Positions 2,360 to 56,840 of a DNA stretch of 64,000 bases are shown piece after piece. Under the pieces are notes generated by a model that did no database searches, was not told the origin of the DNA, and saw only the letters and a program-made list of their open reading frames with translations. The DNA lies in the IMG/VR virus record IMGVR_UViG_3300032770_000002, positions 62,001 to 126,000 of that record, one strand, 5' to 3'. How positions within the stretch are numbered: position 1 is the first letter of the stretch; the number at the start of each line of letters is the position of its first letter. The position numbers and the translations under genes are program-made.

Positions 2360-2364
2360 CCCAT

Positions 2365-3513
2365 ATGGACCAGATCAACACGGTCAATCTTCCGTCGGCT
2401 GGCGGCATTGACTTTAACCAAGGCGACGTTCGCCACATCGGGCCGACGTCAGCATTGGACTGGGAGTCAATTTCATTTGCCACACGGTGCCTTGCCAAGC
2501 GTGACGCCATATTGCGTGACGCGCTTAACACCGTCATTGCGTCATGGAACAATTTTGAGCCGCCTGTCTACCTGCCAATCGTAAAGACGCGCATCCGCGT
2601 TGGAGGGACCGAGCAGGTCTCAAACTACCGCATTCCAGACGGCTATCAGGCCCGTGTCAGCAACGCCATCGTGGCGTCAGTTCCGGCCAACTCAGTCAGG
2701 CTGGACGTCCTCTATAGCACCAACACGTTTGGGGCCAGTTCTGGCACGACCATAGCGACCACGGCGACCGAGTTGACGTCTCCGACGGCATTCTTCAATG
2801 GACCTGGTGAGCTCATTGTGGTGTTGACCAACATTGGGACGTCTGACGCTGACGTGGTTGGAAGCATCCTCGTCGGTGTGCGCTCACTCGTCGTTGAGCG
2901 AAGCCAGCTTTCAGCCATCACGATTTCCAACACCACGCAGGTGGTTGTTGGGCCAAAGGGCGACCAAGGGCCGCGTGGCCTTCAGGGCGACCAAGGGCCG
3001 CGGGGTTACCAGGGAATACAGGGCCCGCAGGGGTCGATTGGTCCAGCGGGGATACAAGGGCCACAAGGTTCGATCGGTCCAGCAGGAAGTGGGATCACGG
3101 CCACGACCGCGGCGGTCTCTGGAACGTTGATCGCGTGGGATGACTTTTCATCGACCAGCTCACCCTACCTCGACTACCAGTCCGGTGGCACTATCGGTGG
3201 AACGTATTACCTGCCGATGCAGCAGACCAAGGTGGCTGGCGACACGACGTCGCTGGACATGCTGATGTGGACATACCACCACATCTTCAGTGGCTCAGTC
3301 CTTGTCAGGCTTCCGACGCAGGCCTATGGGGCCGACATTGACTGGAGTGTGTCGCAGACAGTTTGCATCGCCGTGGCGAGCACGGTTGGCGGCGATGTCA
3401 CGACTCAGGCCGTTGTGTCACAGTATGACAACAACACCTGGCAGATTGACGTGGACGCTCCGACCGAGCAGCTAGTGGCCGTGACCATTGTCGGTCAGAT
3501 TGCGGTCATTTGA
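2365..3513 (+). CDS. Collagen-repeat virion fibre/structural protein
   Basis: 15 Gly-X-Y triplets; T/S/G-rich beta-type sequence; next to portal and baseplate genes. ATG 2365 preferred over 2338. Confidence 0.7.
2950..3084 (+). repeat. Collagen G-X-Y coding repeat ([45 protein letters not shown])
   Basis: Seen directly; includes a duplicated GGCGACCAAGGGCCGCG. Confidence 0.95.
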
Positions 3514-10920: not shown

Positions 10921-11435
10921 ACAGGCGGCGGGCGGTGCAGTTTAAGCGCTCTCTTCAGCCAACCATCCTTGATCCATATCGTCTCCAAGACTCCGGTCTG
11001 CCACAACTGAGCCGGCGCGATCTCGTCAGCATCCACGCGGCTATTGAAGGGTTCGATGCCACCGCCACGAAGATAGAGTGTCACGATGCTTGAACAGATG
11101 CGGCTCGCCTTTCGATGTTTGGACCACGGGTTGAAGAAGCGCTCAAGGGCTGAAATTTCATAGGGCGTTCCGAGAAACGGCCTGATGGCTTCATGCCCGT
11201 TTTTGACGTTAAATGAGTGCGGACGCCTGATGCACACGAGGTGCTTGTCGACGCGAGCTGAGTAGATGTTGACCCCGTTAATCCGGGCGGCAACGACGTC
11301 GTCATCACGCCAAACTGACTCAACGTGAGCGAGCCACGTCCACGTCTTGATGGCGATGAGAAGTCCGACTAGTTCACTCGGGGAGTAGAAGAGAACGTCA
11401 CCCGGTAGGAGGTCAGGAATGTCCGCTATTTCCAT
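10917..11435 (-). CDS. Permuted papain-like amidase (YiiX/YaeF-type NlpC/P60)
   Basis: LLPGDVLFY, AHVE (His before Cys), LGTPY, ICSSIV. Confidence 0.8.
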   Translation of the reverse strand: MEIADIPDLLPGDVLFYSPSELVGLLIAIKTWTWLAHVESVWRDDDVVAARINGVNIYSARVDKHLVCIRRPHSFNVKNGHEAIRPFLGTPYEISALERFFNPWSKHRKASRICSSIVTLYLRGGGIEPFNSRVDADEIAPAQLWQTGVLETIWIKDGWLKRALKLHRPPPV

Positions 11436-12735
11436 TTGCCTTGTTGGTCAACGGATATGGTTTGTCTGGATTTGGAACATTTAAAAACCTGCACAGTTCG
11501 CTCCAGTCACCGCCCTTGCCCATGTCCATGACCAACAGGTCCTCGGGCCGGTCTTTGAAGTGCTCAATGACTTCGGCGTTGTGTCTTCGATAACGTTCCA
11601 AAAATACGGTCGGTTCAAAGTCCGTTCTACCATAAAGTATTTGGTGGACACGGTTGGAAAAAGGGTCGTTGTCCCAAGCCGCGCGAAACGGGTTGAGCCT
11701 AGGGTCCCAATGGTTTCGCACGCTAGTCAACCAGTCTTGCTCATCGCGAATTGTCAGGATAAATTTGGACCTAGGGTATGCGGCGTCAAGCTTTCGAAAG
11801 AGCATCGGGATTGGCAGGTCCGTGGCCGCGTAGCACCTTTCGAGTGTGGGTGACCTTCCAAACTGGTTCATCTCACGCCAAACGGCTTTGGCCCAGTGCG
11901 CACTCGGCCAATGAGCGCACTTGAAGCCAAGTATCGTCAGGGCGTGGTGCAGGCTGGTCGTGGCCGTCTTGTGCATGCCTATGCCGAAGACGCGCGTTGG
12001 AACTGGATTGACGTGAATCACGCCGTCGCCAAAGTTTTTGAACACTGCCCCGCACCCGATGACGCCGCTGTTGGCTACCGTGGCGTGTGGCTCAATGTGA
12101 AAGTCTTCGCTGATGTTGAAAGCGGCTTCAGGGTAGTCCTTAAACCGCATCTTGTCATTGTGCAGGATGGCCTGCAGAAAGCGTGGGTCAATTTCACGGC
12201 CGTCAAAGCCAAGCCGGCGCAGCCTTGCATTGAAGTCCTTGTCATCCGGGCTGTAGGTGTGATATTTCTCATCATAGCCACCGGCTATGAAAAAGGCCGA
12301 ACGTGAGACGGCGATTCGGCCACTAATTCCGCGTGGCAGACGGTTTTCACCTTCCTTGACCATGCGCGACCACAGGAAGATGTCATCGCCGCTTTGAAAC
12401 TGCTCCCTGACATAGTCGGCAAAGCCTTCACCTGTAAAATTGTCCGCGTCTAGGTTGACCAAGACGTCACCGCCCTCGATCGCCCCAAGCCGGTGGGCAA
12501 GGTTCTTCGCGTGAGCCATGTGGAACGCAACAGGTTCCTTATACTGGTAGACGACGAGCCGACCACTTTCGATGTCCTTGGCGTGATTTGACTTCAAGTA
12601 ACTGGTCAAGCCGTCTTGATCATTGTAATCCACGACTACGAAGCGAGCTTCGGGATTGTGGGCCAAATTCCGAGGCAGCGTTCGTTCGAGGTGCTGCACC
12701 CGGCCTTTGCACGTGGTGCAGAAGACGATGTTCAT
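11413..12735 (-). CDS. GT2 glycosyltransferase fused to sulfotransferase domain
   Basis: N-half: CTTCKGR, VVVDY, LVNLDAD, GGYDE..DD.DF. C-half: VFGIGMHKTATTSL (5'-PSB loop), ATDLP, KFILTIRD..DWLTS, GDWSELCRFL. Confidence 0.85.
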   Translation of the reverse strand: MNIVFCTTCKGRVQHLERTLPRNLAHNPEARFVVVDYNDQDGLTSYLKSNHAKDIESGRLVVYQYKEPVAFHMAHAKNLAHRLGAIEGGDVLVNLDADNFTGEGFADYVREQFQSGDDIFLWSRMVKEGENRLPRGISGRIAVSRSAFFIAGGYDEKYHTYSPDDKDFNARLRRLGFDGREIDPRFLQAILHNDKMRFKDYPEAAFNISEDFHIEPHATVANSGVIGCGAVFKNFGDGVIHVNPVPTRVFGIGMHKTATTSLHHALTILGFKCAHWPSAHWAKAVWREMNQFGRSPTLERCYAATDLPIPMLFRKLDAAYPRSKFILTIRDEQDWLTSVRNHWDPRLNPFRAAWDNDPFSNRVHQILYGRTDFEPTVFLERYRRHNAEVIEHFKDRPEDLLVMDMGKGGDWSELCRFLNVPNPDKPYPLTNKANGNSGHS

Positions 12736-13289
12736 AGATTTCTTAATATGAATAAGCTGTCCCAGTAATTTAGTGAGTTCGGCTTTCCATAGAGCCGGTG
12801 TTGCCGCACGTTATACCACCGCCGAAGTTTTTGAACGAGCTCAGCCATAAACTCCTTGCTGCGTCGTGCGGGAGTGTGCTGGTGAAATTCCACCGTGATT
12901 TGGTCGGCTGGTGGGTGTTCCAAGTTCCACAGGATCTCATATTCGCCTCCTTCGCAGTCTAACTTAATAGCGTCCCAATGGGCTACGCCGACAATTTCGC
13001 TGAAAGACTTGATGGTCCAAACATTGAGGCGATCGCCACTGACGAGTTGACGGGCTAAAGGGTCCGGGTCATGGCTGACGTCACCATAACCGTCAGCCGC
13101 GGCGATGCCACAGCGGTAATAGTGCTGGGAATTGCCGAGGTCATCAATGTCAACCTCGTAGACCCTGGCATGAAAACGCTTGCGCAATTCATTTCCAAAG
13201 CCAAAGCCACGGCAACCGACGTCGAGCACGGTGCAACCGGGTTTCAAGAGCGCCGTGTCCAACGTGTGCTCTTGAAACGTTTCCAACAT
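12732..13289 (-). CDS. FkbM-family SAM-dependent methyltransferase
   Basis: VLDVGC motif I, IKLDCEGGEYEIL, QITVEFH. Confidence 0.82.
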   Translation of the reverse strand: MLETFQEHTLDTALLKPGCTVLDVGCRGFGFGNELRKRFHARVYEVDIDDLGNSQHYYRCGIAAADGYGDVSHDPDPLARQLVSGDRLNVWTIKSFSEIVGVAHWDAIKLDCEGGEYEILWNLEHPPADQITVEFHQHTPARRSKEFMAELVQKLRRWYNVRQHRLYGKPNSLNYWDSLFILRNL

Positions 13290-13291
13290 AG

Positions 13292-14047
13292 TCAGGTTTT
13301 GGTTTTGTTGCTGCCGTGGTGGTGATGGTGGTGTTGACGTCGAGACCTTCTTGGAATGCCTGTGGTAGGCGGCATCAGGATAATCACATCACCGTCATTG
13401 TTCAGCAGGCTCTCAAAGTCTTTAAGCGTTAAATAGAATCGTCCTCGCAGGCCCCAAGATTCGCCCCACGAGTTGTCAAAAATCAGTCTTTCACCGTTTT
13501 GGTCGAACTCACGACACAGTATCTCATGGCCACCGGCTATGGCCCCAGTTGGACGCACTCGGCCATCAGCGTCTGGCGTAAACATTCTCTCGTGCCAGTC
13601 ACACCCGAACAAAAACGGATACGCTGACAACGCCAGCAAAACAGAACTAATGTCAAAGCAGTGCTGATAGCTGGTAATCACGCCAGCGTGGGCCAGGACC
13701 TTTGCGCACGTCAAACCACTGCTGCCGTTGTCATTCGGCGGATACGGGCCGTCACCGTCAAGGTTCTCCTCGTCATTGTAAAGCTTCAAGACTCCGGCCT
13801 GGTCGAGTGAGTATGGGTTGTGCGCCAGGTTGTCGAAGAGTGGGCTTGTGCCAAGGTTGCCTATCCCGGCGTCTCCAGTGCATGAGCCAACTTCGCCTTG
13901 ATCGAGGATTGGGATGTGCCTTTGGTGGACAACACTCTTGATCTGCAGGCCCTCCGTTCGGAAGGTAAATCGACGGCTTTCACTGTCGTGGTTGACGTGC
14001 CGGCCAAGTTTCGGGTGTGGGTGTGCGTAACGTCTTTTGGTGATCAT
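13292..14047 (-). CDS. Papain-family (C1) cysteine peptidase
   Basis: LDQGEVGSCTG (Gln, Cys), GGHEI (His), FDNSWGESWG (Asn); C-terminal HHHHHH. Confidence 0.88.
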   Translation of the reverse strand: MITKRRYAHPHPKLGRHVNHDSESRRFTFRTEGLQIKSVVHQRHIPILDQGEVGSCTGDAGIGNLGTSPLFDNLAHNPYSLDQAGVLKLYNDEENLDGDGPYPPNDNGSSGLTCAKVLAHAGVITSYQHCFDISSVLLALSAYPFLFGCDWHERMFTPDADGRVRPTGAIAGGHEILCREFDQNGERLIFDNSWGESWGLRGRFYLTLKDFESLLNNDGDVIILMPPTTGIPRRSRRQHHHHHHGSNKTKT

Positions 14048-17759: not shown

Positions 17760-17794
17760 TTTTTGTTTACAAATCACGGCCATTGTGGTATATT
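17760..17794 (+). promoter_or_regulatory. Early sigma70-type promoter (T4-early-like)
   Basis: TTTTTGTTTACA (-35 TTTACA 17766-71), 17 bp, TGTGG-TATATT (17789-94). Confidence 0.8.
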
Positions 17795-19939: not shown

Positions 19940-19976
19940 AATTTTTGTTTACAAAGCGCGGCAATTGTGATATAAT
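19940..19976 (+). promoter_or_regulatory. Early promoter (T4-early-like)
   Basis: TTTACA 19948-53, 17 bp, TGTGA-TATAAT 19971-76; ATG 7 nt downstream. Confidence 0.85.
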
Positions 19977-24736: not shown

Positions 24737-24949
24737 GTGCGGGTTCTTGAAGATCAAGTGAAATTTGTGATTAAGCAGGCCAATGCGGACCAGTTTATTG
24801 GCGTTTACGAAGGCCGATACTTCTGGACACCTTCACTGATTACCCGGCGATTCTTTGGGTCGCGTGCCGAGGCCCAAAGGTTCATCCGAAAACACTCCTT
24901 AAGCGGGGTTGAACTCGTTGAGGTCCCATGCCCGGTAAGCGCTACCTGA
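24737..24949 (+). CDS. Hypothetical protein
   Basis: 70 aa upstream of the methylase. Confidence 0.5.
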   Translation: MRVLEDQVKFVIKQANADQFIGVYEGRYFWTPSLITRRFFGSRAEAQRFIRKHSLSGVELVEVPCPVSAT

Positions 24950-25887
24950 AGTTTTTCAACTGGCCTGGATCGAAAGTTCGTGTCCTTCCATGGCTGTTGC
25001 CAAAATTTGAGATAGCCGATCGTGGACTTTACGTCGAGCCATTTCTTGGCTCTGGGAACGTGTGGCTGAATGTCCCTGAAAAGTTCAGCCAATACATCCT
25101 GAATGACAAGGTCCCCTACGTCATTCGGTTCTTCAAGGCCATGGCCGACGTTTCATGCCGCGTGGCCTTGCTTGAACAACTTGAACGATTGCGGGCCACT
25201 TACCCAGTAAAACCGTCGCCTAAGTTAAAGCAAAAAATTGTCAACCACGCTGAGTTGACGCCTGATGAAGTAGAGCAGCGCAACACGTTAAAGCAAAGCT
25301 ATTACAATCTTCGTGACAAGTGGAATGGGCATCGGCGTGAAAACCTTAATAACGCGGCAAATTTAACCTGGTCTAACGCGGCCTTTGCGTATCTCTGTGG
25401 GGCCTGCATCAACAACCTTGTCAGGTTTGGAAGCAACGGAAACTTTAATCAAGGGTGGGGACAGCGAGAGCTTGACTTGAATTCATTCGGATTGGTTGCC
25501 GACCGAGTCGCCCACCGAAATAATCGGACGTGGTTTCACACGCATGACTTCAACAGTCTGCTCAGCAACATCAGTGTGAGAGGCCTGCTTTCACGGAGCG
25601 TGGTCTACCTTGATCCGCCGTATGGCACGCGGTCCGAGGCGAGGGTCAACGGGCTTTACGGATTGGAAAATTCATGGACGGCTGAAAATGACCAAGCCGT
25701 CATGGCATGGTGTCTGGCCATCCACAAGGCTGACGGGCTCTTTGTCCTGTCAAATTTGATGGAGAATCCAGGCGTGGCGAGACTGATTCAGGAGTTCAAC
25801 GTCCAAGTCGTGCCAATCAAGTATAAGGCGTCCGTTGGACGGCACGAAGTTCGTGAACAAACTGAGGTCATCATCTCGAATTTCTAA
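24928..25887 (+). CDS. dam: N6-adenine DNA methyltransferase, Dam/D12 class
   Basis: WPGSK, YVEPFLGSG (motif I), ILND, VYLDPPY (motif IV). Confidence 0.9.
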   Translation: MPGKRYLKFFNWPGSKVRVLPWLLPKFEIADRGLYVEPFLGSGNVWLNVPEKFSQYILNDKVPYVIRFFKAMADVSCRVALLEQLERLRATYPVKPSPKLKQKIVNHAELTPDEVEQRNTLKQSYYNLRDKWNGHRRENLNNAANLTWSNAAFAYLCGACINNLVRFGSNGNFNQGWGQRELDLNSFGLVADRVAHRNNRTWFHTHDFNSLLSNISVRGLLSRSVVYLDPPYGTRSEARVNGLYGLENSWTAENDQAVMAWCLAIHKADGLFVLSNLMENPGVARLIQEFNVQVVPIKYKASVGRHEVREQTEVIISNF

Positions 25888-27574: not shown

Positions 27575-27626
27575 TAAAATTTTGTTTACAATTTCTGTTT
27601 ACAAAATCGTGTCGTCATGGTAGAGT
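27575..27626 (+). promoter_or_regulatory. Early promoter with duplicated -35
   Basis: GTTTACA at 27584 and 27597; second copy has a 17 bp spacer to TGG-TAGAGT (27621-26); ATG at 27636. Confidence 0.7.
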
Positions 27627-35789: not shown

Positions 35790-35825
35790 ATTTTTGTTTA
35801 CAAAATCACGTTGGCGTGGTATATT
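35790..35825 (+). promoter_or_regulatory. Early promoter (T4-early-like)
   Basis: TTTACA 35797-802, 17 bp, GTGG-TATATT 35820-25; ATG 6 nt downstream. Confidence 0.82.
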
Positions 35826-36759: not shown

Positions 36760-36765
36760 ATTTTA

Positions 36766-36849
36766 GGGAGCGCGCGTTCCGCCGTGATCCCACAATCCCG
36801 GACCCGCCGTTGGCGAGCTAGCCGGGCTTCACAAAGGAACCGCGCTCCC
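36766..36849 (+). ncRNA. Candidate rod-like structured RNA (84 nt), family unknown
   Basis: Nested pairings GGGAGCGCG/CGCGCTCCC, GTTCC/GGAAC, GTGA/TCAC, CCCGG/CCGGG, CGCC/GGCG fill an intergenic gap. Confidence 0.55.
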
Positions 36850-36869
36850 GCTCTTTTGAGATACACCCA

Positions 36870-37346: not shown

Positions 37347-37832
37347 GTGAAATCGCGTTCGCTTATCGACGCACTGGTGTTCAACAACCCGTCCGACCTT
37401 GTGTCGATGACGGAGTCGTTTGACCTTCATCCAAAAAATGACTCGTCAAGATTCAGTGTTTCGAGTTGGGTGTGGAAGGCCCTGCTGTGGGTGATCGAGA
37501 GTTCGGCCGCGCTCGCTGGGCTCGCCATTGACTTTGACTACTGGGACTCCAATGACAACCGCGGACTAGGAACCCAGGCCGAGTGCGATGAACTGGCCGA
37601 CGCCATTGAAAAGTTTATTCGCGGCCGGTCAGATGACTTCGTCTTTCACCGCCCATTCAGTGAGGGTGAAAAGCAAAGCATCGTCTTGATGCTCATCAAC
37701 AGCACCGGGTCAACGCAAGCTGACGCTGAGGACTTTGTTCGGCGTGAGACAAAACACTACGTCGTTGACGTCGCGACGATTCGCGAGTTCATCGCATTCC
37801 TACGCCAGTGCGGCGGCTTCGAAATCGGCTGA
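37347..37832 (+). CDS. Leader-bearing hypothetical (MKSRSLIDAL)
   Basis: Variant leader; TGATG overlap with next gene. Confidence 0.65.
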   Translation: MKSRSLIDALVFNNPSDLVSMTESFDLHPKNDSSRFSVSSWVWKALLWVIESSAALAGLAIDFDYWDSNDNRGLGTQAECDELADAIEKFIRGRSDDFVFHRPFSEGEKQSIVLMLINSTGSTQADAEDFVRRETKHYVVDVATIREFIAFLRQCGGFEIG

Positions 37833-38083
37833 TGAAGGCGTGGCACTTATACATTGTCCGGTGTGTGGACAACTCGCTTTACACAGGCATCACGACTGAC
37901 GTGGCCCGCCGAGTCGTGGAGCACAACACGTCGCCACGTGGCGCCCGCTACACGCGGTCAAGGCGGCCGGTAGAGCTGGTGTGGAAGAGCCTTGGCGTTG
38001 AGCGGTCATTTGCGGCCAAGGCAGAAGCGAAGTTTAAGACCTACTCGAAGCGGCAGAAAGAGGAATTTCTGAAGATGCTATGA
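37832..38083 (+). CDS. Small GIY-YIG nuclease (YhbQ/UPF0213-like)
   Basis: WHLYIVRCVDNSLYTGITTDVARRVVEHN...GARYTRSRRPVELVW. Confidence 0.88.
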   Translation: MKAWHLYIVRCVDNSLYTGITTDVARRVVEHNTSPRGARYTRSRRPVELVWKSLGVERSFAAKAEAKFKTYSKRQKEEFLKML

Positions 38084-39141
38084 TCCTTCACGAGGTCAAC
38101 CTCAACCAAGGCCGAATTGGCGTCGAGATGGAAATGCTCATTCGCCTCGACCTGTCACGCGACGCGGACACGCACGTGACTGACCCTCGTTTCAGGGCCA
38201 AGATGCGCCAGGTCTTCACTGACTGTGGCTTCACCCTCGGTGATGACCCAACGGTCATTCAGCACAGCCTCTCAACGGACATCTTTTACGCCAGCTTTGA
38301 GACGGCCAACCAGGAGCTTGAGGGCGCGGCGTGGAGCGACCTTGAGCCAAGGCTGACGGCGCTCCTTTCATGGCTGAAGCGCAACGACCGAGTTTGGGTT
38401 GACCGGATGTCTCACGCTGTCACCACCATACCGCAGTCTGGAGCGTCCTGGGCTGACACGGTGCTGCCGAGGGCCAAGATGCCGAACAACACGACGTGTG
38501 GGCTGCACATTCACTTCCACGCTGAAGACTGGTTCGGTGACTTTGACCACGCCATCCGCTTTGTCCAGCTGTGGAACCGCTCACGCGACTTCTTCAAGAA
38601 ACTGGCCCACCCGGCTCGGTATAAGACTGGCCAAGGCTACGTGGCCACCGGCGACGAGCACGCCGACATCAGCAAGCCGATGAGCGTCCCAACACCAGAC
38701 ACGGTGCGCAGGCTGAAGGCCGAGTGGGAAATGACGCCGACTGGCTATCAGGTTCGTAAAATCCTCAAGTGGATGTCACTGCACCGGTGGACGGCGCTCA
38801 ACACGACGCGGGTTGAATTTCGCAAGGACATTGAGTTTCGGCTGGCCCATGGGACGATGAACATTGGCACCATCACGCACTGGGTGAGCATGTTCGCGTC
38901 GCTCATTGAAGCCGCGAAGGAGACACGCATGCCGTCAACCTTTACGCGATACATGTGGAGTGAGGAGCGCCCGCTGATGGTTGACTACCTCAAGCGCAGT
39001 GGAAAGCTGGCCAAGGCCGACACGTCACACGCCGCGCCCTATGACCTTCCAAAGCGAATGGGCCGTCCCATTCGCCGACTGCTCTACCCGCAAAACGCCA
39101 AATTTATCCCAGTCAAAAGTGAAGGCGCGGCAACTCATTGA
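38080..39141 (+). CDS. Putative amidoligase (Amidoligase_2, GS fold)
   Basis: IGVEME, TCGLHIHF, RWTALN, DIEFRLAHGT. Confidence 0.82.
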   Translation: MILHEVNLNQGRIGVEMEMLIRLDLSRDADTHVTDPRFRAKMRQVFTDCGFTLGDDPTVIQHSLSTDIFYASFETANQELEGAAWSDLEPRLTALLSWLKRNDRVWVDRMSHAVTTIPQSGASWADTVLPRAKMPNNTTCGLHIHFHAEDWFGDFDHAIRFVQLWNRSRDFFKKLAHPARYKTGQGYVATGDEHADISKPMSVPTPDTVRRLKAEWEMTPTGYQVRKILKWMSLHRWTALNTTRVEFRKDIEFRLAHGTMNIGTITHWVSMFASLIEAAKETRMPSTFTRYMWSEERPLMVDYLKRSGKLAKADTSHAAPYDLPKRMGRPIRRLLYPQNAKFIPVKSEGAATH

Positions 39142-39760
39142 CGACGTGAATGACCAGGAGCTGCTCGTCCGGGCTCACCGGCTCGTGCTCGCCCGTGGGA
39201 TGGGCGAACAGATTCCGGCGAACGACCCAGTCCTTGCCCAGCTAACTCAAGCCGTCATTCAGTGGATGGATGAAATACAGGTCCCGGCCAGTGAGCGAAT
39301 GCGCTATCTCTACTTCGCGATTTTAAACAACACATCCGAGCACATTCGAGCGCGATTGAGCCGCAACCCACTCGAAGTCGTCTTTTACGAACTGCTACGA
39401 ACAAACCTATCGTTGCTGTGGACGGCTTATGCTAAACAAGCCGACTTTCACGAGCAGCGCAGGCTGTGGCGCAGCGCGATGCACAAGATCGCCTCAGTCA
39501 AGCGGAGTGGGTGGCAGGTGTGGCATTGTTCGCCGCGGTATCGCGACGACTCACGTATGAGCGCCAGTAGTGATGACTGCGTGGCCGTCATCCACCCGGC
39601 TTTCTTCCCATTCATTCAAACATGTCAAGGCGCTGAGCAGGTCACTGATGAGCGAGCAAGCAACATCATGGAGCCTGACGCTGGCGAATTAGAAGGACCG
39701 GATGAACCGCCATTTAACGAGACAGGTGACGTGGCTGGTGGTTATCTTGATGACGAATGA
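39119..39760 (+). CDS. Leader-bearing hypothetical (MKARQLIDD)
   Basis: GTG 39119 in frame with the ORF-track call. Confidence 0.7.
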   Translation: MKARQLIDDVNDQELLVRAHRLVLARGMGEQIPANDPVLAQLTQAVIQWMDEIQVPASERMRYLYFAILNNTSEHIRARLSRNPLEVVFYELLRTNLSLLWTAYAKQADFHEQRRLWRSAMHKIASVKRSGWQVWHCSPRYRDDSRMSASSDDCVAVIHPAFFPFIQTCQGAEQVTDERASNIMEPDAGELEGPDEPPFNETGDVAGGYLDDE

Positions 39761-40521
39761 CAGCACGAGCTAAAATTGACGAGATGGCCGAATACATGAT
39801 GGGCCAGCATAGTGAGCGCCAGAAGGCCAGGCGAAAGGTCTCCGTTGGCAAGGTTCGGCTTACCTTGGGCAAGGGGAGGTTCGGAAAGCCAGAACAGGCC
39901 ACGAAGTGGGAGCTTCGTTTCACCATTTATGGGAAGAATTACTCGATCAAGTCCTATGAAGCCTCCGGCCACTTGCCAGCATCGATAGTTCGACGCTACG
40001 GCCTTGAGGTTGGCACCGCCATAGACCCAGCGCCGGCTTACGGCCCGGCGATTGACTACCCCACGCTTAATTTTGGCGGTTGGAACAAGAATTCAACTGT
40101 CAACTCCGTCATGGACGAGATCGCCGCTGATCCAGGCAAGGGCGACGTCCTTCGGTTCTTTATTGAGCGCATCGTCCCGCTCATCAAGCAGACCGTTGAC
40201 ACGTTCAGCGTTGAGGATGACCTGCCAAAGGTCTTCATGGGAAAGGGCTCAAGGGCCGACTTGCGGTTCACCGCCCGCGGCCGCGGCTTTCGCCTCGCCT
40301 TGAACAAGTATCGCTTTACGCGTGCGGGTCCTGGCGCTCAGCTTGAGCGGTTTGTCCAAGTCGCCCGCAAGCCTGAAGACGTCCTCGCCAAGGTGGAGAT
40401 TGCCGACCAAGGGTTTCCGAGCACCTTCTGGGTCCTGCTCAACCCTGAGGAGCTTGACAGCTTTAAGGTTGACATTCAACGAAACGCGCGTGAACACGTT
40501 GGAGGCATCCTCGGCCGATGA
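39757..40521 (+). CDS. Leader-bearing protein, paralog family A (MTARAKIDE-MAEY...WVLLNPEE)
   Basis: Shared N- and C-terminal motifs with 40518, 46972 and 48577. Confidence 0.75.
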   Translation: MTARAKIDEMAEYMMGQHSERQKARRKVSVGKVRLTLGKGRFGKPEQATKWELRFTIYGKNYSIKSYEASGHLPASIVRRYGLEVGTAIDPAPAYGPAIDYPTLNFGGWNKNSTVNSVMDEIAADPGKGDVLRFFIERIVPLIKQTVDTFSVEDDLPKVFMGKGSRADLRFTARGRGFRLALNKYRFTRAGPGAQLERFVQVARKPEDVLAKVEIADQGFPSTFWVLLNPEELDSFKVDIQRNAREHVGGILGR

Positions 40522-41330
40522 ATGCACGAAACTTCATAGATTTTGTTTACAAATCACGGATTTGTGGTATGATCCGTGAGATGGCCGAGTATCGCATGCC
40601 TGACGAGCCAAAACACGTGATCACCGTGTCGACCGGCGTAAAGATTGGCGATGAGTATCTCTCACTTCGCCACTCGCGTGGCTGGTCTAATTTGTCGTGG
40701 CGCACTACAGGTCCTGCAAACGCGCAAAACATCTCCGTTTTCGCTAATTCTAGCGTGCAACTGTCTGATCGGCGTGAGCGGTCGTTTCAGGTTATTCGCC
40801 CGCCTTCGACTGAGTTTGCCACGGCTCTTCGCGAGCTCTTGCAAAAATTTTTCACAGCCCGAGGCCGTGGGATCTCACGTTTTTCATTTCCGTGGTCAAG
40901 GCACCTTAAGGCATTGAACACCAAGTTTCCAAATGCCCTCGATGACGTGAAGGCCGAGGCCTACGAAAAGGCCGAGGCGTGGGTGGCGGAAAATGAGTTT
41001 CCAAGCCATGAGCTAGAGCCAGTTGAAAAGATCGAGCTTCCAGAGCCAGTTGATGACAACCCTGAGAGGTTTTGGCCTTATCTCGCGCCGCTCATTCAAG
41101 ACATTCGCTTCATCACCCACACTAATGAAAAGAAAATTGCGGCCTTTCTCAAGTTAAAAGGGCCTGACGATGACGTTGTCCGAGTTGACATAGGCTTTCA
41201 CGAGGTTTACTTCTTGGTCAACCCCGAGGAGCGTGAGATGCTCAGGCGCGCCATCACCTTGGCGCTTCGCAAGTTCATCGAAGAGGTCGGACTTGGCCAG
41301 CGTGAAGAGGAGAACGATGAGGTCCGATGA
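40518..41330 (+). CDS. Leader-bearing protein, paralog family A, with internal early promoter
   Basis: MNARNFID-FVYKSRICGMIR-EMAEY...YFLVNPEE. Confidence 0.75.
   Translation: MNARNFIDFVYKSRICGMIREMAEYRMPDEPKHVITVSTGVKIGDEYLSLRHSRGWSNLSWRTTGPANAQNISVFANSSVQLSDRRERSFQVIRPPSTEFATALRELLQKFFTARGRGISRFSFPWSRHLKALNTKFPNALDDVKAEAYEKAEAWVAENEFPSHELEPVEKIELPEPVDDNPERFWPYLAPLIQDIRFITHTNEKKIAAFLKLKGPDDDVVRVDIGFHEVYFLVNPEEREMLRRAITLALRKFIEEVGLGQREEENDEVR
40541..40573 (+). promoter_or_regulatory. Early promoter embedded in frame in a CDS leader
   Basis: TTTTGTTTACAAATCACGG (identical to 17761-79), 16 bp spacer, TGTGG-TATGAT 40568-73; ATG 40581 lies 7 nt downstream. Confidence 0.78.
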
Positions 41331-46610: not shown

Positions 46611-46975
46611 AAGCTGTAGCGCGCGTCATCGACAAGTTCAAGCGTTGGATTAAGTCGCACAAGCTTGGTGAACCTTATGTCGTGACCACGAGCTACGTCC
46701 ACGACATGCCACTTCTCCCGGGCGTTTATCATCGATACATGATTTCTGGCGGCGATTTTCCACTGGACATGCGGACTGACTTCTGTCAGGTCGATGATAA
46801 GGTTGACTCGCTCATTCACTCACTGGCCACGCTTAACGGCGGAAGTTACCTCAAGAGCGGTATGATTAACCACGACCGCCTCATCGTCTTTACGTTCGAT
46901 GACCTCGCCGACGTGGACAACTTCAAGCTTCAACTGGACCGACGGGCACCGAAGGTCGTGGTTAGGGTGAAATGA
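46607..46975 (+). CDS. Leader-bearing protein, paralog family B (MKAVARVID)
   Basis: SLATLNGGSYLKSG...FTFDD..D...F..QL.RR.P. Confidence 0.7.
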   Translation: MKAVARVIDKFKRWIKSHKLGEPYVVTTSYVHDMPLLPGVYHRYMISGGDFPLDMRTDFCQVDDKVDSLIHSLATLNGGSYLKSGMINHDRLIVFTFDDLADVDNFKLQLDRRAPKVVVRVK

Positions 46976-47805
46976 ACGCGCGCACGGTTATTGACGAGAT
47001 GGCGCAATATTATGTCGGCCCGATGCGACCTTACGACGAGACTCACGTTGAGGATGTCGAGCTGAAGTTTTATGACCGCAGGCGCTTTGACCAGAAGTGG
47101 TATTTCACAGCTACTGTTTATCACAAAGGGAAGATTTACAGGTATCGAATTAATGGCAGTCTGTCAGAGCGGCTGATCAATAAAGTGAAGACAGTGTCAT
47201 CGCGGACGTGGAAAGGCTTTGAAGATAAGATTCAATTAAACCCACTCCTTTGGAAGCTTTACACCGAGAATATCAAGCCGCAGTTTACAGCGGCGCTTAA
47301 TGACGTGAATGCGCACTTGTCGCTTCACCCAGAACGCCGGTTCGACGGCTTCAAGTTTATAGGGATGCCACATAACAGGGACAAGCCAATTGAGTCGTAT
47401 CAATTTCTTGGGCCATCCGTCAGGTTGACACCAAGGAAGCCAGACGAGGTGTTGACCTACCCATGGCTAACTCGCAAGGAGCTAATCGATTTCCTTGACG
47501 TTGAAGGTTTTCGCTATATAGACACCATTAGCCAATACGGTATCGAAATGTCAACTCGACGTGGCCGCGAGATTGGAGCAAAAGATCCACAACATCGTTT
47601 GGCTACCTTCCTTAACAAGCTTGAAAGACCGGGTGATTCACTTTTAACAATCAAATCCTCGCAAAGTGTGGGAGAGCTTTGTTGGGTCCTGATGAATCCT
47701 GAGGAGCGTAAGCGGTTTGGCCTTGAAATTAAGAGAATGGCCCGTAACAGAGTTAAAGATCTGTTGAGTCATGAAGATAATCCAGATTTAGACTTAGAAT
47801 ATTGA
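46972..47805 (+). CDS. Leader-bearing protein, paralog family A (MNARTVIDE-MAQY)
   Basis: Closely similar to 48577..49392 (YY.GP..PYDE.H.E..ELK.YDR...QKWYF). Confidence 0.78.
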   Translation: MNARTVIDEMAQYYVGPMRPYDETHVEDVELKFYDRRRFDQKWYFTATVYHKGKIYRYRINGSLSERLINKVKTVSSRTWKGFEDKIQLNPLLWKLYTENIKPQFTAALNDVNAHLSLHPERRFDGFKFIGMPHNRDKPIESYQFLGPSVRLTPRKPDEVLTYPWLTRKELIDFLDVEGFRYIDTISQYGIEMSTRRGREIGAKDPQHRLATFLNKLERPGDSLLTIKSSQSVGELCWVLMNPEERKRFGLEIKRMARNRVKDLLSHEDNPDLDLEY

Positions 47806-48079: not shown

Positions 48080-48577
48080 ATGTCATATAAGCAAAAACAA
48101 GCGTGTAGACGACGAATGGTTCGGTTGTGGAAAGATCAAAATTGGCGTAAGAAGATCGCCAAATCTACGAAACGTCAATGGTCCAACCCTGATTTTGCAT
48201 CACGCGTAAGAAACCCGATGGTGTTTTTCAACTATCTTCGCAGTAATTACAGATGCGGAGCGGCCAGACGAAATCTTCCGTTTGAATTAACCCCTGAACA
48301 AATAGCCGAGATAGTGATTCGTCCGTGTTTCTATTGCGGTTCCATGCCGGAAAAGTCAAAGTGGGCCGTCTTTATTGAACGTGGTCGAGCAGTCTACAGG
48401 CGATTTAGCGTTGTTCCGGATCATCACGGGATTGATCGTGTTGAAAATTCAAAGGGTTACACTCTCGACAATGTTGTAAGTTGTTGCAGTATTTGTAACG
48501 TCGCTAAAAGAACGATGTCGAAAGATGCATTCTTAGAGTGGGCAAAAAGATTGGCCCATCATCAAGGTTGGATTTAA
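48080..48577 (+). mobile_element. Free-standing HNH (His-Me) endonuclease
   Basis: CFYCG...GIDRVENSKGYTLDNVVSCCSICNVAK; AT-richer than its flanks. Confidence 0.85.
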
Positions 48578-49392
48578 TGGACTCACGCCAAACTATTGAT
48601 AGGATTTTTGAGATGGCGCGATACTACATCGGCCCGATCAAGCCGTATGACGAGATTCACCTTGAAAACGCTGAGCTGAAGTATTACGACCGCAAGCGTG
48701 GGCCACAGAAGTGGTATTTTCGGGTCAATGTCCTCTATCAAGGGCGGGTCTTTGAATATAGGAATTGGGGAGACCTTGCGAAGCGCCACACGAGTAGCAT
48801 TGATTGGGAGAAGCGGCGTGAGCTGAAGCAGACCAACCAGCCGAAGGCCATCTTCTCAATGTCTTCAATGACGTTGAAGAAGTGGGAGGAAAAGGCCGCC
48901 AAGAACCCAGACGTCTGGAAGCTCTACACCGAGACCATCAAGCCGCACCTCGACAAGTCACTTGAGGACTTTGAGAAGATGTCTGGCAAGCCAACGATTC
49001 AGCCCGACCAATTTCTTTCAGGAACTGCTAACCGGCAAGACGACGACACGTGGGCCGATCCAGAGCGTTGGAGAAGAGCGGCGAATCCGCGCGATTTTTC
49101 ATGGCTGTCGAACGATCAGTTTCGACAGGTTCTCGATGATGAGGGCATTCGCTACATGCAGGACATCGCCGAATATGGTGTGGAACGCTACGCCAAGTAT
49201 TGGCAAATGGACGATTGGAAGCGTGTGGCGGTGTTTATCGACAAGCTGATGAAGCCAGACGACAAGTTGTTCGACATCAGAACGGCTCAGCGTCACCACG
49301 ACTACGTCCTGATGAACCCAGAGGAGCAGGAGCGGTTTGAAGCGCGCATTCAACGGCTGGCCCGCCAGAATGTCAGCGGCATGCTCTCATGA
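48577..49392 (+). CDS. Leader-bearing protein, paralog family A (MDSRQTIDRIFE-MARY)
   Basis: TAATG overlap with the HNH stop; YVLMNPEE. Confidence 0.78.
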   Translation: MDSRQTIDRIFEMARYYIGPIKPYDEIHLENAELKYYDRKRGPQKWYFRVNVLYQGRVFEYRNWGDLAKRHTSSIDWEKRRELKQTNQPKAIFSMSSMTLKKWEEKAAKNPDVWKLYTETIKPHLDKSLEDFEKMSGKPTIQPDQFLSGTANRQDDDTWADPERWRRAANPRDFSWLSNDQFRQVLDDEGIRYMQDIAEYGVERYAKYWQMDDWKRVAVFIDKLMKPDDKLFDIRTAQRHHDYVLMNPEEQERFEARIQRLARQNVSGMLS

Positions 49393-52877: not shown

Positions 52878-53849
52878 ATGCCGTCATGTTTTGCGCCCCA
52901 ATCGAAGCTCCTCTTCTACCCGACCCAAGTAAAAGCCTTCGTTGACGACCACTCCGCACCGCCAGTCAACATTGAAATCAGCCCGACCCATGACTGCCCA
53001 GCTCGTTGCCCGTGGTGCTGGTTTGTGTCGTCAAAGGCGAATCACCCGCGCCACGTGAAGGAGGAGCTGAAATTTTCAGTGCTTGCGCAGACAATCGACG
53101 CCATGGCCCGAATGGGCGTCAAGGCCATCACGTGGACTGGAGGCGGCGACCCGTCGGTCTATTCGGCGATCAACGAGGCGATTGACCTCACAGCCAGTTT
53201 TGGCCTCGAACAGGGGATGTTCACCAACGGCTACAAGCCGATCAACCACCCTGAGAAGCTGGCGTGGATCCGCCTGACTGTGACTGAGCAGTTCAGGGTG
53301 CCAAAGTCAGCGAGTGGCTACGCGGCCAAGACCAAGGTCGGCGTCAACTTCAACCTGTGCCAGGAGAACGCGACGCACCTGCGCGCGATGGTTGAGGCGG
53401 CTCGCAGTTCTGGCGTGCACTACTTCCAAGTGCGCCCAGCGTTGGCCACAAGCGCTGAGAAACAACTTCCAGTTGAGTTCCCTGAGTGGCTGCAGGACTA
53501 CTCGACTGAGAACTTTGAGGTCGTCACGACCGACTACAAGTTCAACGACTACCTCAAGCCACACGGCTATCCGCTTTGCCACGGCCACCGGCTCGTTCCA
53601 TTTGTCTGGCACAACGGTGACGTGGCCGTTTGCGCCTACCACTTCGGGAAGCCTGAGTTCATCTTCGGCAACTTGAACGAGCAGTCATTCGAGGAGATTT
53701 GGAACGGTGAGCGGCGCGCGACGATGCTCAGGGATGGCGTCGCCGTCATCCCGGCCTGTCAACGCTGCTGCAAGAACCACGAGATCAACAAGGCCCTTGC
53801 CGCCTTGCGTGGTGAGTATGCCCTGGTCAAGGACCAAAAGTTCCTATGA
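52878..53849 (+). CDS. Radical SAM enzyme with SPASM/twitch domain
   Basis: CPARCPWC (CxxxCxxC), TGGGDP, GDVAVC...GNL...FEEIWNG...CQRC. Confidence 0.9.
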   Translation: MPSCFAPQSKLLFYPTQVKAFVDDHSAPPVNIEISPTHDCPARCPWCWFVSSKANHPRHVKEELKFSVLAQTIDAMARMGVKAITWTGGGDPSVYSAINEAIDLTASFGLEQGMFTNGYKPINHPEKLAWIRLTVTEQFRVPKSASGYAAKTKVGVNFNLCQENATHLRAMVEAARSSGVHYFQVRPALATSAEKQLPVEFPEWLQDYSTENFEVVTTDYKFNDYLKPHGYPLCHGHRLVPFVWHNGDVAVCAYHFGKPEFIFGNLNEQSFEEIWNGERRATMLRDGVAVIPACQRCCKNHEINKALAALRGEYALVKDQKFL

Positions 53850-55745: not shown

Positions 55746-56258
55746 TTACGGGTCGCGCAGCTCTTCGGGCATGTGGTGATCTGGCCGTGTCTCGCGAATG
55801 ACGGAACGCACAACCATCAGCAACCGGCCAAGGTGGTTTTTGCCACGCCAAGTCGTGTCGTCACAACCCCAGAAGCGGTCGTTCCAACTGTTGCCCTCAA
55901 TTAGCTGTGCATCCCCAGTCTCTAGGAGCTTATGGCGCAATATCGGGTCGCTGAACTTAATCATGAGCAGGTTGAACATGACTTCCAGCTTCACCTCTTC
56001 CCAATCGGCGCGTAGGGTGCAGTGCTTGCCTTTGGCCTTAGCCTCGCCGGGTGTTGCAGTCAGGCGGATGTCCTCGATCTCGTCCTCGTTGAGCGTCTTC
56101 GCGGCTTGATAGGCGTGCTCTACGCTTGGGTAGAACTTTTCAGTTTCGTGCGCGCCTTCGACCCGAATGACTCCCATGTGGAAGTTTGACAGAAAGCGGT
56201 AGTCACCCCTGAAGTGCTTGATTGGCCCTGGGCCAATCGTGCTTGTTTCGTGTTCCAT
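55746..56258 (-). CDS. NADAR (YbiA-like) family N-glycosidase/ADP-ribosylhydrolase
   Basis: FLSNF, SVEHAYQAAK, RADWEEVK, LLETG...LIEGN.W.DRFWG, GKNHLG.LLM.VR. Confidence 0.92.
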   Translation of the reverse strand: MEHETSTIGPGPIKHFRGDYRFLSNFHMGVIRVEGAHETEKFYPSVEHAYQAAKTLNEDEIEDIRLTATPGEAKAKGKHCTLRADWEEVKLEVMFNLLMIKFSDPILRHKLLETGDAQLIEGNSWNDRFWGCDDTTWRGKNHLGRLLMVVRSVIRETRPDHHMPEELRDP

Positions 56259-56261
56259 ATG

Positions 56262-56840
56262 TTAGACGACCCACTCCCAAAACAACATCAAGCCGAGCAG
56301 CTCCTCATGAAAACCGTTCTTTTTCATCTCGGTCCAAGCGTCGTCCTTCGTCCACCCCTGTTCCCAAACTCGGTAGCACCCGATGACAAGGCCAGTTCGG
56401 TCTTGGCCATGCTCACAGTGGACGAACACGCTCGTTGGGACTTCAAAGGCCGTTGTGATGATGGACGTGGCCGCGACGACGAGGTCCTTGCGCGGCTTGA
56501 AGACGAGTTGGTCTTCAAGCGGGATCGGCATGTAGTGGACGCGAATGCCAAGGGCCTCAGCCGCGACGTCAGACGATTCACCCTCAGTGTTGAGCTTGAC
56601 GACGTCCGTCACGCCTTTGTCCTTGAGCCACTTAAAGCCGTCATTGTCGGGCTGCCCGCCACGGTAGATGAATTTCCCTGGCGGTGCGCTGATGGCTCCC
56701 TCAACGGTCATTAGGTTAGGGATTCCTACGTCTGGCATGATGTTCATGGGACCTAGAACACCGACCCTGTTCTTCTGGCCATGGGCAATGGATTTGACGA
56801 ACCGAGTGAGCATGTCAAGAACACCTGCAAGGTTGGCCAA
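56262..56840 (-). CDS. Cys-based protein tyrosine/dual-specificity phosphatase
   Basis: YRGGQP, VFVHCEHGQDRTG (HCxxGxxR). Confidence 0.9.
   Translation of the reverse strand: MANLAGVLDMLTRFVKSIAHGQKNRVGVLGPMNIMPDVGIPNLMTVEGAISAPPGKFIYRGGQPDNDGFKWLKDKGVTDVVKLNTEGESSDVAAEALGIRVHYMPIPLEDQLVFKPRKDLVVAATSIITTAFEVPTSVFVHCEHGQDRTGLVIGCYRVWEQGWTKDDAWTEMKKNGFHEELLGLMLFWEWVV

What the first reader, a model, noticed from the sequence alone, without database searches (positions are those of the whole stretch)
40518..40600. An early promoter inserted in frame inside the leader: one gene, two expression routes giving the same mature protein
Seen: paralogs read MTARAKID-EMAEY and MNARTVID-EMAQY, but this copy reads MNARNFID-FVYKSRICGMIR-EMAEY. 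The extra 36 nt (40542-40577) are the phage early promoter: TTTTGTTTACAAATCACGG, identical to 17761-17779, then TGTGG-TATGAT. The ATG of MAEY (40581) lies 7 nt after the -10, the same geometry as the leaderless early gene at 19984. Inference: a late, operon-derived protein carries the leader and would be cleaved at E|MAEY, while an early leaderless mRNA makes the identical mature chain without packaging. This independently supports the leader boundary and shows a compact way to switch a gene between injected and early-expressed.
Basis: partly seen in the sequence, partly recalled or inferred. Interest (0 to 1): 0.85.

Follow-up and report, generated by a model that had tools for sequence, protein, structure and literature searches.

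The report
Promoter cassette inserted inside a phage gene
A 36-base copy of this soil jumbo phage's standard host-type promoter sits in frame inside the start of one gene, so the gene can probably be made with or without its short N-terminal tag; that the tag is a cleaved packaging leader is not supported.

Summary
ORF 40518..41330 carries 12 extra codons (40542-40577) that form a complete sigma-70-type promoter: -35 TTTACA, 16-nt spacer, TG-extended -10 TATGAT, and an in-frame ATG 7 nt later at 40581.

- **Promoter family.** It matches at least 11 other copies on this 230-kb phage contig. Each has an ATG 6-13 nt after the -10, so the transcripts would be leaderless.
- **Insertion.** Positional orthologs in two related phages lack it; they have 4- and 3-residue linkers instead. 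It is therefore specific to this lineage. It landed in a linker that varies from 0 to 12 residues across the family.
- **Likely mechanism.** A nested gene. Read-through mRNA encodes a 270-aa protein with the N-terminal tag MxARxxID. The internal promoter gives a leaderless mRNA for a 249-aa tagless form and boosts transcription of downstream genes.
- **Not supported.**
  - The "late operon".
  - Cleavage at E|M: the residue after the tag varies among tagged proteins.
  - Packaging or injection.
  - "Identical mature protein".
  - A related phage puts the same promoter directly upstream of a tagged paralog, which speaks against "early means tagless".
  - A distant homolog keeps 8 similar residues without any -10.

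This is a new variant of known kinds (virF internal promoter, T4 PeSL cassettes). The tag, found on dozens of ORFans, is the more novel feature.

The parts
40518..41330 (+). Long reading frame (270 aa plus stop). Its ATG overlaps the stop of the upstream paralog (ATGA).
   Evidence: The same overlap is used by the orthologs in L123 and L124.
40518..40541 (+). Eight codons of the N-terminal tag (MNARNFID), matching the consensus M-x-A-R-x-x-I-D.
40542..40577 (+). 36-nt in-frame promoter cassette (12 codons, FVYKSRICGMIR), absent from positional orthologs.
40546..40551 (+). -35 hexamer TTTACA
40565..40573 (+). Extended -10: TG (40565-40566), one base, then TATGAT (40568-40573).
40579..40581 (+). 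Predicted transcription start, 6-8 nt after the -10, giving a 5' UTR of 0-2 nt. This is an inference, not a measurement.
   Evidence: Geometry. The ~6-7 bp rule for -10 to ORF in leaderless genes is from PMC12340547.
40581..41330 (+). Short reading frame (249 aa plus stop) starting at MAEY: the tagless product of the leaderless mRNA.
   Evidence: The Met is ancestral in the ortholog clade (EMAEY in P0007, EMGEY in P0006).
40554..40579 (.). Perfect 8-bp inverted repeat TCACGGAT / ATCCGTGA bracketing the -10. It would fold only in read-through RNA. It is unique to this copy; its role is unknown.
39757..40521 (+). Upstream paralog (254 aa) with no linker (MTARAKID-EMAEY).
46972..47805 (+). Paralog (277 aa), no linker.
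48577..49392 (+). Fourth paralog (271 aa, equals P0005), linker RIF.
35797..35825 (+). Next upstream same-strand copy of the promoter. Its leaderless ATG is at 35832.
36766..36860 (+). Long GC-rich hairpin followed by a U tract: a possible terminator or attenuator between the 35797 unit and the genes from 36870 onward.
   Evidence: -47.8 kcal/mol, z -3.9, 0 of 200 shuffles fold as well
17766..17794 (+). Closest copy of the promoter in the window (19 of 19 identical at its 5' end). Its ATG is at 17805.
19948..19976 (+). Promoter copy with ATG 19984, 7 nt after the -10.
27598..27626 (+). Promoter copy with ATG 27636, 9 nt after the -10.

Best explanation
**What happened (shown by sequence comparison).** A compact cassette of about 36 nt was inserted, in frame, into the variable linker of one member of a five-paralog ORFan family. 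The linker lies between the 8-residue N-terminal tag and the conserved ExxEY motif. The cassette is the host-RNA-polymerase promoter that this jumbo phage uses repeatedly: TTTG-TTTACA, a 16-17 nt spacer, then TG-n-TAtAtT.

**What follows (inferred).**
1. RNA polymerase starts at about 40579-40581. The transcript has the pre-existing Met-22 AUG at or within 2 nt of its 5' end.
2. That transcript is translated as a leaderless mRNA into a 249-aa protein without the tag. It also carries the downstream genes (41327 onward).
3. Transcripts arriving from upstream still encode the 270-aa protein. This form keeps a complete tag and has 12 promoter-encoded residues in the linker.

The gene thus becomes a nested pair of isoforms that differ by the tag. 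The tag's function is unknown. It is a predicted amphipathic N-terminal helix shared by dozens of unrelated proteins of this phage lineage, so a sorting or recognition signal is the most natural guess.
For: - **Family membership.** The 19-mer is identical to the 17761 copy with 0 expected by chance. In total 12 strict copies share the -35, the spacer length, the TG and the -10, and have an ATG 6-13 nt downstream.
- **Insertion.** Syntenic orthologs in L123 and L124 lack the cassette. They form a 100/100 clade with this gene in a tree built without the N-terminus.
- **Cassettes move between related genomes.** L128 has a copy filling a 39-nt gap before P0011. P0011's best match in the window is ORF 48577, whose ATG abuts the stop of the upstream gene with no gap, and no promoter copy was found there.
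- **Placement.** The -10 lies 7 nt before an ancestral in-frame Met. By my own estimate, only about 1-2% of random insertion sites in this gene would do that near the N-terminus.
- **Translation context.**
  - Shine-Dalgarno motifs lie upstream of only 11 of 57 genes, against a 12% background.
  - A -10 placed 6-7 bp before the ORF is an established leaderless layout (PMC12340547).
- **Long form still plausible.**
  - The tag consensus residues are all intact and the frame is open.
  - P0015 shows that the family tolerates 8 promoter-derived residues at this spot when read from the tagged start.
- **Precedent.** The virF internal promoter gives a leaderless mRNA and a truncated VirF21 (PMC5101355).
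Against: - No transcript or protein data exist, and the host is unknown.
- This copy lacks the A/T-rich stretch found upstream of the intergenic copies. Its -10 has G at position 4.
- An in-frame, stop-free 36-nt insert is expected by chance about one time in three. The open long frame therefore does not prove that the tagged form is still used.
- P0015 shows that such an insert can persist as plain coding sequence without a -10.
- The age of the insertion cannot be estimated, because only one genome of this species exists.
Confidence: 0.45

Rival explanations
1. Promoter booster only. The cassette is active, but what matters is renewed transcription of this gene and the genes downstream. The gene has in effect been converted to a tagless leaderless gene. 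The open upstream 20 codons are a recent, unselected leftover.
For: - An in-frame, stop-free insert is about a 1-in-3 event (inference).
- The hairpin with U tract at 36766-36860 may cut off transcription from 35797, so a new promoter would be useful.
- The public gene call ignores the upstream start.
- -10 motifs inside annotated ORFs often mark the true leaderless start (PMC12340547).
Against: - All five consensus positions of the tag remain intact, and the ATGA coupling to the upstream gene is kept.
- The first insert codons (F-V-Y) continue the tag's hydrophobic pattern.
- P0015 keeps a comparable insert that can only be read from the tagged start.
Confidence: 0.2
2. Silent scar. The cassette was copied in by recombination but is not an active promoter here. 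The only product is the 270-aa tagged protein with a longer linker, as in P0015.
For: - The linker tolerates 0-12 residues.
- P0015 carries a homologous insert without a -10.
- This copy lacks the upstream A/T tract and has a non-consensus -10.
Against: - It keeps 10 of 12 consensus positions plus TG. It ties for best site in 18 kb.
- The exact 7-nt distance to an in-frame ATG is unlikely without selection.
- The L128 copy with a similar TATGTT -10 sits in a functional position before a gene.
Confidence: 0.15
3. The tag is a capsid-targeting or injection leader removed by a prohead protease at E|M. Late operon mRNA gives a packaged protein and early leaderless mRNA gives the identical mature chain in the cytoplasm.
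For: - A short N-terminal peptide shared by unrelated proteins is what T4's capsid targeting sequence looks like (PMC9026906).
- In this paralog family the tag ends I-D-E, which fits a Leu/Ile-x-Glu type site (my own knowledge of the T4 gp21 logo).
- The leaderless start is exactly the residue after that E.
Against: - The residue after ID varies among tagged ORFs, and homologs put 3-8 residues between ID and E.
- No prohead protease was recognised in what I could search.
- The tagged genes sit among ORFans in units that start at host-type promoters.
- L128 drives a tagged paralog directly from the same promoter.
- Nothing shows a late promoter class.
Confidence: 0.08
4. Chance resemblance or convergent coding sequence, with no promoter origin.
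For: None beyond the fact that the core string is a generic strong sigma-70 consensus found in over 100 unrelated viral contigs.
Against: - The 19 of 19 identity includes non-consensus spacer bases, with 0 expected in shuffles.
- About 30 of 34 positions match the 17761 copy.
- The segment is absent from orthologs.
Confidence: 0.01

Closest known systems
Shigella virF gene-internal promoter giving a leaderless mRNA and the truncated VirF21 (PMC5101355)
   Same: A promoter lies inside a coding sequence. The 5' end falls 0-2 nt from an in-frame AUG. One gene yields a long and an N-terminally shortened protein.
   Different: Here the promoter is a discrete, repeated cassette that was inserted recently and is absent from orthologs. 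What is removed is an 8-residue tag plus the insert, not a domain. The setting is a phage. Nothing has been shown experimentally.
PeSL mobile early-promoter cassettes of T4-like phages (PMC2839356, PMC4122927)
   Same: Near-identical early-promoter sequences are scattered through ORFan-rich regions and differ in presence between related genomes.
   Different: PeSLs are promoter plus stem-loop composites that lie between genes and act as recombination joints. This copy lies inside an ORF, in frame, with no terminator stem-loop, only an 8-bp inverted repeat around the -10. Kinship of this phage to T4 was not tested.
T4 capsid targeting sequence of internal proteins (PMC9026906, PMC3012670)
   Same: A short N-terminal peptide is conserved across proteins whose remaining sequence is unrelated.
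   Different: There is no conserved cleavage residue, no identified prohead protease and no virion evidence. The tag is on far more genes: at least 16 in this window, with more in L127 and L128.
Leaderless genes with a -10 placed 6-7 bp before the ORF in Deinococcus-Thermus (PMC12340547)
   Same: The geometry is the same: TAnnnT a few bases before the start codon. Shine-Dalgarno sequences are scarce, and -10 motifs occur inside annotated ORFs.
   Different: Here a strong -35 and a TG extension are also present. The host is unknown. The upstream extension carries a conserved tag, so it is not a mere annotation error.

Membership tests
This phage's leaderless host-type promoter family | TTTG-TTTACA -35 block | tested here: met
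   12 of 12 bases TTTGTTTACAAA
This phage's leaderless host-type promoter family | 16-17 nt spacer ending in TG-n, then -10 TAnnnT | tested here: met
   16 nt, TG at 40565-40566, TATGAT
This phage's leaderless host-type promoter family | ATG 6-13 nt after the -10 that opens an ORF | tested here: met
   7 nt; ATG 40581 opens a 249-aa frame
This phage's leaderless host-type promoter family | Intergenic position with an A/T-rich tract upstream | tested here: not met
   The copy lies within ORF 40518..41330 and the bases upstream code for NFID
This phage's leaderless host-type promoter family | Initiates transcription in infected cells | not testable with these tools
   No transcript data; host unknown
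Nested gene with internal promoter and leaderless mRNA (virF type) | Promoter inside the coding sequence, upstream of an in-frame AUG | tested here: met
Nested gene with internal promoter and leaderless mRNA (virF type) | mRNA 5' end within 0-2 nt of that AUG | tested here: inconclusive
   Predicted only, from the 7-nt distance
Nested gene with internal promoter and leaderless mRNA (virF type) | Both protein forms are made and differ in function | not testable with these tools
   No proteomics. Family function is unknown: no Pfam, PHROG or fold match.
T4-type capsid targeting sequence | Short N-terminal peptide shared by otherwise unrelated proteins | tested here: met
   At least 16 window ORFs plus many in L127 and L128. 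Codons vary, so the conservation is at protein level. The strict motif is found in 7 of 57 N-termini and at 0 of 7720 internal positions.
T4-type capsid targeting sequence | Peptide ends at a conserved prohead-protease site | tested here: not met
   The residue after ID is E, D, H, A, K, R, S, M or Q. The linker to ExxEY is 0-12 residues.
T4-type capsid targeting sequence | Phage encodes the matching prohead protease and core | tested here: inconclusive
   None was recognised among the proteins searched. The only lead is a PHROG 'peptidase' of unknown kind at 13292..14047. Less than half of the contig was readable.
T4-type capsid targeting sequence | Tagged proteins are in the virion and are ejected | not testable with these tools
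   Needs virion proteomics
PeSL-type mobile promoter cassette | Presence or absence differs between related genomes at the same junction | tested here: met
   Absent in L123 and L124 at this site. Present in L128 before P0011, whereas no promoter copy precedes P0011's best window match, ORF 48577, which abuts its upstream gene.
PeSL-type mobile promoter cassette | Composite of an early promoter with a terminator stem-loop | tested here: not met
   No terminator-like stem-loop adjoins the copies

The most novel reading that the evidence does not exclude
The 8-11-residue N-terminal helix M-x-A-R-x-x-I-D is a sorting signal used by dozens of unrelated ORFan proteins of an undescribed soil jumbo-phage lineage. 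The destination could be the capsid interior, another phage-built compartment, or a dedicated protease or chaperone. Movable 36-39-nt leaderless promoter cassettes can land on either side of the tag. A gene can thereby be switched, or split, between the sorted and the unsorted form. Gene 40518 would be the caught-in-the-act example.
Probability: 0.15. Interest if true: 0.85.

Novelty: new variant of a known kind. Interest (0 to 1): 0.55.

Why it matters
If the internal promoter fires, this is a natural case of a very small movable promoter module rewiring a gene in one step. It would add a new transcription start, a leaderless translation start and loss of an N-terminal tag, without destroying the original reading frame. 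That bears on how phages shuffle expression timing and protein targeting in their ORFan regions. It also suggests a compact design for dual-form expression. The finding further points to the tag itself. The tag is shared by dozens of proteins, has no known function, and can be tested directly by fusing it to a reporter.

Tried and rejected
**Homolog searches**
- No DNA or protein match in the annotated phage collection.
- IMG/VR and JGI metagenome scans with the protein, with alignments A1 and A3, and with the helicase found only this contig.
- The word-indexed protein search found only the gene itself, or P0011 when given A2.
- Only the exhaustive HMMER search found the family.

**Promoter pattern scans of IMG/VR**
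- One search used a wrong gap length. These scans gave two extra pieces of this contig and nothing on relatives.

**Function of the family**
- AlphaFold model: pLDDT 75.7, N-terminal 30 residues at low confidence.
- Foldseek against PDB and BFVD gave no significant match.
- Pfam and PHROGs gave no hit for the family or its neighbours.
- Rfam found nothing in 35-45 kb.

**Ideas dropped**
- That the 16-nt spacer is unique to this copy and was selected to keep the frame. One other strict copy and two looser matches also have 16 nt.
- That the first genes after these promoters never carry the tag. L128 is a counter-example.
- That the conserved N-terminus is a DNA or RNA element. Its codons vary freely.

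**Left open**
- I did not walk the rest of the 230-kb contig to look for head genes and a prohead protease. Each look-up adds only about 10 kb, and Pfam hits are very sparse in this phage.
Full report
**Where the window comes from**

The window is bases 62001-126000 of a 230,253-bp viral contig from a JGI metagenome, IMGVR_UViG_3300032770_000002. It has no DNA or protein match in the annotated phage collection. Nearly all of its genes lack Pfam or PHROG hits. The same gene is carried by three assemblies of this contig.

**Checking the observation**

ORF 40518..41330 is open for 270 codons. It reads MNARNFID, then FVYKSRICGMIR, then EMAEY. Paralogs at 39757 and 46972 read MTARAKID-EMAEY and MNARTVID-EMAQY, and the three-way alignment has one clean 12-column gap.

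The 19-mer TTTTGTTTACAAATCACGG is exact at 17761 and at 40541, with a 2-mismatch copy at 19943. None was expected in 100 shuffles.

The parts are:
- -35 TTTACA at 40546-40551
- a 16-nt spacer with TG at 40565-40566
- -10 TATGAT at 40568-40573
- seven bases, then ATG at 40581

**The promoter family**

A strict pattern (TTTACA, 16-17 nt ending TG-n, TAnnnT) finds five sites in the window, all on the + strand: 17766, 19948, 27598, 35797 and 40546. It finds six more in the other readable pieces of the same contig (L031, L073, L127) and one in a related phage contig, L128.

All share TTTG before the -35 and AA after it. Every copy has an ATG 6-13 nt after the -10, median 7. In the window these ATGs (17805, 19984, 27636, 35832) open ORFs of 47, 277, 310 and 67 codons. 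The public gene call also starts at 35832.

Shine-Dalgarno-like motifs lie upstream of only 11 of 57 called genes, against a 12% background. A -10 placed 6-7 bp before the ORF is the documented layout of leaderless genes in Deinococcus-Thermus (PMC12340547). I therefore accept that this phage starts its host-polymerase transcription units with leaderless or nearly leaderless mRNAs, and that the 40546 copy belongs to the family.

The copy differs in two ways. It lacks the A/T-rich tract upstream, because that DNA codes for NFID. Its -10 has G at position 4, as does the L128 copy (TATGTT).

The core string is a generic strong sigma-70 consensus seen in more than 100 unrelated viral contigs. It therefore says little about the host.

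**Is it an insertion?**

An exhaustive HMMER search with the paralog alignment found the family elsewhere. Two hits are positional orthologs.

- **P0007** (L123, Logan SRR22327725) lies between a 39757-like gene and a 41327-like gene.
- **P0006** (L124, ENA HuN_forest) lies between P0004 and a 41327-like gene.

In a tree built without the N-terminus, these two and gene 40518 form a 100/100 clade.

At the site of the insert, P0007 has four codons (SVID) and P0006 has three (QLF). Neither has a promoter. The cassette was therefore gained in the lineage of the window phage.

Across the family the stretch between ID and ExxEY is 0, 1, 3, 4, 8 or 12 residues long. The cassette landed in a naturally indel-tolerant linker.

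The first and last two codons of the insert (TTT GTT ... ATC CGT) resemble the ortholog's linker (TCT GTC ATC GAT). The net gain may therefore be only 24 nt, joined at microhomologies. I could not decide this.

**Cassettes differ in place between relatives**

In L128 the same promoter fills the 39-nt gap between a stop codon and the ATG of P0011. Its spacer starts AATCACGGA, as in the 40546 copy. P0011's best match in the window is ORF 48577. That ORF's ATG abuts the stop of its upstream gene with no gap, and no promoter copy was found there. This resembles the presence/absence behaviour of PeSL cassettes in T4-like phages (PMC2839356, PMC4122927), although no terminator stem-loop accompanies the copies here.

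**A caution from P0015**

P0015 is a more distant family member, from the same sample as P0007, and lies outside the ortholog clade. At the same position and in the same frame it reads ID-KLYRPRIC-EMAQH.

Its DNA keeps TTTACA and a spacer-like stretch, with 16 of 24 nt identical to the window insert. It is 12 nt shorter and has nothing resembling a -10.

There are two readings:
- a promoter cassette entered this site more than once or was passed between paralogs, and decayed in P0015; or
- these residues are tolerated or useful as protein.

Either way, P0015 shows that the tagged reading frame survives such an insert. A promoter-derived insert is not proof of promoter activity.

**What would the cassette do?**

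The -10 ends at 40573, so initiation is expected at A40579, G40580 or A40581. That leaves 0-2 nt before the AUG of Met-22. This Met is ancestral in the ortholog clade: EMAEY in P0007 and EMGEY in P0006.

The original gene has two in-frame Met codons near its N-terminus, apart from M1. By my estimate only about 1-2% of random insertion points would place a -10 6-10 nt before one of them. This argues that the arrangement was selected for expression. By contrast, an in-frame, stop-free 36-nt insert is about a one-in-three event, which is weak evidence that the long form is still needed.

The tag of gene 40518 keeps every consensus residue and the ATGA coupling to the upstream gene. The first insert codons (F-V-Y) continue the tag's hydrophobic pattern.

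The public gene call starts at ATG 40569, inside the -10. That ATG would lie upstream of the predicted transcript and has no ribosome-binding signal. I regard the call as an artefact.

**An extra feature**

A perfect 8-bp inverted repeat (TCACGGAT 40554-40561, ATCCGTGA 40572-40579) brackets the -10. No other copy has more than 6 bp.

In read-through RNA it forms a hairpin ending 2 nt before the Met-22 AUG. The 101-nt segment folds at -32.4 kcal/mol, z -2.1. It cannot form in the short transcript.

It could suppress internal initiation on long mRNA, or be an operator. This is a post hoc observation and is speculative.

**The upstream route**

The next same-strand promoter is the copy at 35797. 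The simple scan finds no convincing terminator between it and 40518.

However, the 110-nt gap at 36760-36869 folds into a long GC-rich hairpin followed by a U tract: -47.8 kcal/mol, z -3.9, with none of 200 shuffles folding as well. Genes from 36870 onward may therefore depend on read-through.

"Two routes" is reasonable. "Late" is not shown: I found no other promoter class, and the block consists of ORFans together with a GIY-YIG protein and an amidoligase.

**The tag**

M-x-A-R-x-x-I-D begins at least 16 ORFs in the window. Their starts are 9474, 10313, 10732, 26238, 37347, 39119, 39757, 40518, 41330, 44946, 45454, 46218, 46607, 46972, 48577 and 49389. It begins many more in L127 and in the related contigs L123, L124, L128 and L242.

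Codons for Ala, Arg, Ile and Asp vary freely, so the conservation is at protein level. A strict form of the motif occurs in 7 of 57 N-termini and at none of 7720 internal positions. AlphaFold predicts a helix over residues 3-15, followed by a low-confidence stretch.

This recalls the T4 capsid targeting sequence, a 10-19-residue propeptide shared by divergent internal proteins (PMC9026906). Several points count against that reading:
- The residue after ID varies among tagged ORFs.
- The hydrophobic pattern runs on past that position.
- No prohead protease was recognised in what I searched.
- L128 drives a tagged paralog directly from the host-type promoter.

The packaging and cleavage reading is therefore not excluded but has little support. 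With it falls the claim that both routes give the same mature protein.

**Verdict**

My preferred mechanism is a nested gene with a tagged long form and a tagless leaderless short form, at confidence 0.45.

The closest precedent is the virF internal promoter with its leaderless mRNA for VirF21 (PMC5101355). The cassette behaviour is closest to PeSLs.

I rate the finding a new variant of a known kind, with interest 0.55. The widespread N-terminal tag deserves its own follow-up.

Noticed in passing
window ORF starts 9474, 10313, 10732, 26238, 37347, 39119, 39757, 40518, 41330, 44946, 45454, 46218, 46607, 46972, 48577, 49389; also L127, L128, L123, L124, L242: An N-terminal tag M-x-A-R-x-x-I-D, often followed by x-hydrophobic-hydrophobic, starts dozens of otherwise unrelated ORFan proteins in this phage and its relatives. 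Codons vary, so the conservation is at protein level. A strict form is never found internally. Its function is unknown.
   Followed up: partly
window 36766-36860: A long GC-rich hairpin (-47.8 kcal/mol, z -3.9) followed by a U tract, in the only sizeable gap of the + strand block after promoter 35797. It may be a terminator or attenuator. It is unique in the window and has no Rfam match.
   Followed up: partly
L128:3289-3330: In a related forest-soil phage contig the same promoter cassette fills a 39-nt gap between a stop codon and the ATG of a tagged paralog (P0011). The leaderless mRNA there would include the tag.
   Followed up: yes
L122:1080-1140: Homolog P0015 carries, at the same site and in the same frame, an 8-codon insert (KLYRPRIC). 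It keeps TTTACA and spacer-like bases (16 of 24 nt identical to the window insert) but has no -10. It is a decayed or partial cassette.
   Followed up: partly
window 40569: The public gene call for this gene (253 aa) starts at the ATG inside the -10 hexamer. It misses both the tagged start at 40518 and the likely leaderless start at 40581.
   Followed up: yes
window 30700-59100: Shine-Dalgarno-like motifs precede only 11 of 57 called genes, against a 12% background. Most genes are joined by overlapping stop and start codons. This points to a host that translates without Shine-Dalgarno pairing.
   Followed up: partly
promoter copies at 17766, 19948, 35797, 40546; L031:10389; L073:442: The spacers contain a partial palindrome (ACAA ... 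TTGT, or CCACG ... CGTGG) between the -35 and the extended -10. It extends to 7 bp in the 40546 copy (40549-40565). It may be a regulator site.
   Followed up: no
IMG/VR loci L145-L201: The core string TTGTTTACAAA, 11-12 nt, TGnTATAAT occurs in more than 100 unrelated viral contigs. The promoter core is a widespread strong sigma-70 form, not a signature of this phage.
   Followed up: no
P0008, P0009, P0010, P0013, P0014, P0016: The C-terminal part of the paralog family, around the NPEE motif, also occurs at the ends or inside of larger proteins of 310-733 aa from other metagenomes.
   Followed up: no
window 1326-3513, 7733-9466, 11413-14047 (-), 24928-25887, 37832-39141, 52878-53849, 55746-56747 (-): Recognisable genes in the window include: a baseplate wedge-like protein and a collagen-like tail fibre; a helicase; a sulfotransferase/glycosyltransferase, a methyltransferase-like protein and a PHROG 'peptidase'; a DNA methyltransferase; a GIY-YIG protein and an amidoligase; a radical SAM/SPASM protein; a NADAR protein and a protein tyrosine phosphatase.
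   Followed up: no
L128 versus window: The gene order of the related contig L128 is a mosaic of window segments (44.6 kb, 50.4 kb, 41.7 kb, 48.6 kb, 49.7 kb). This indicates modular shuffling in the region.
   Followed up: no
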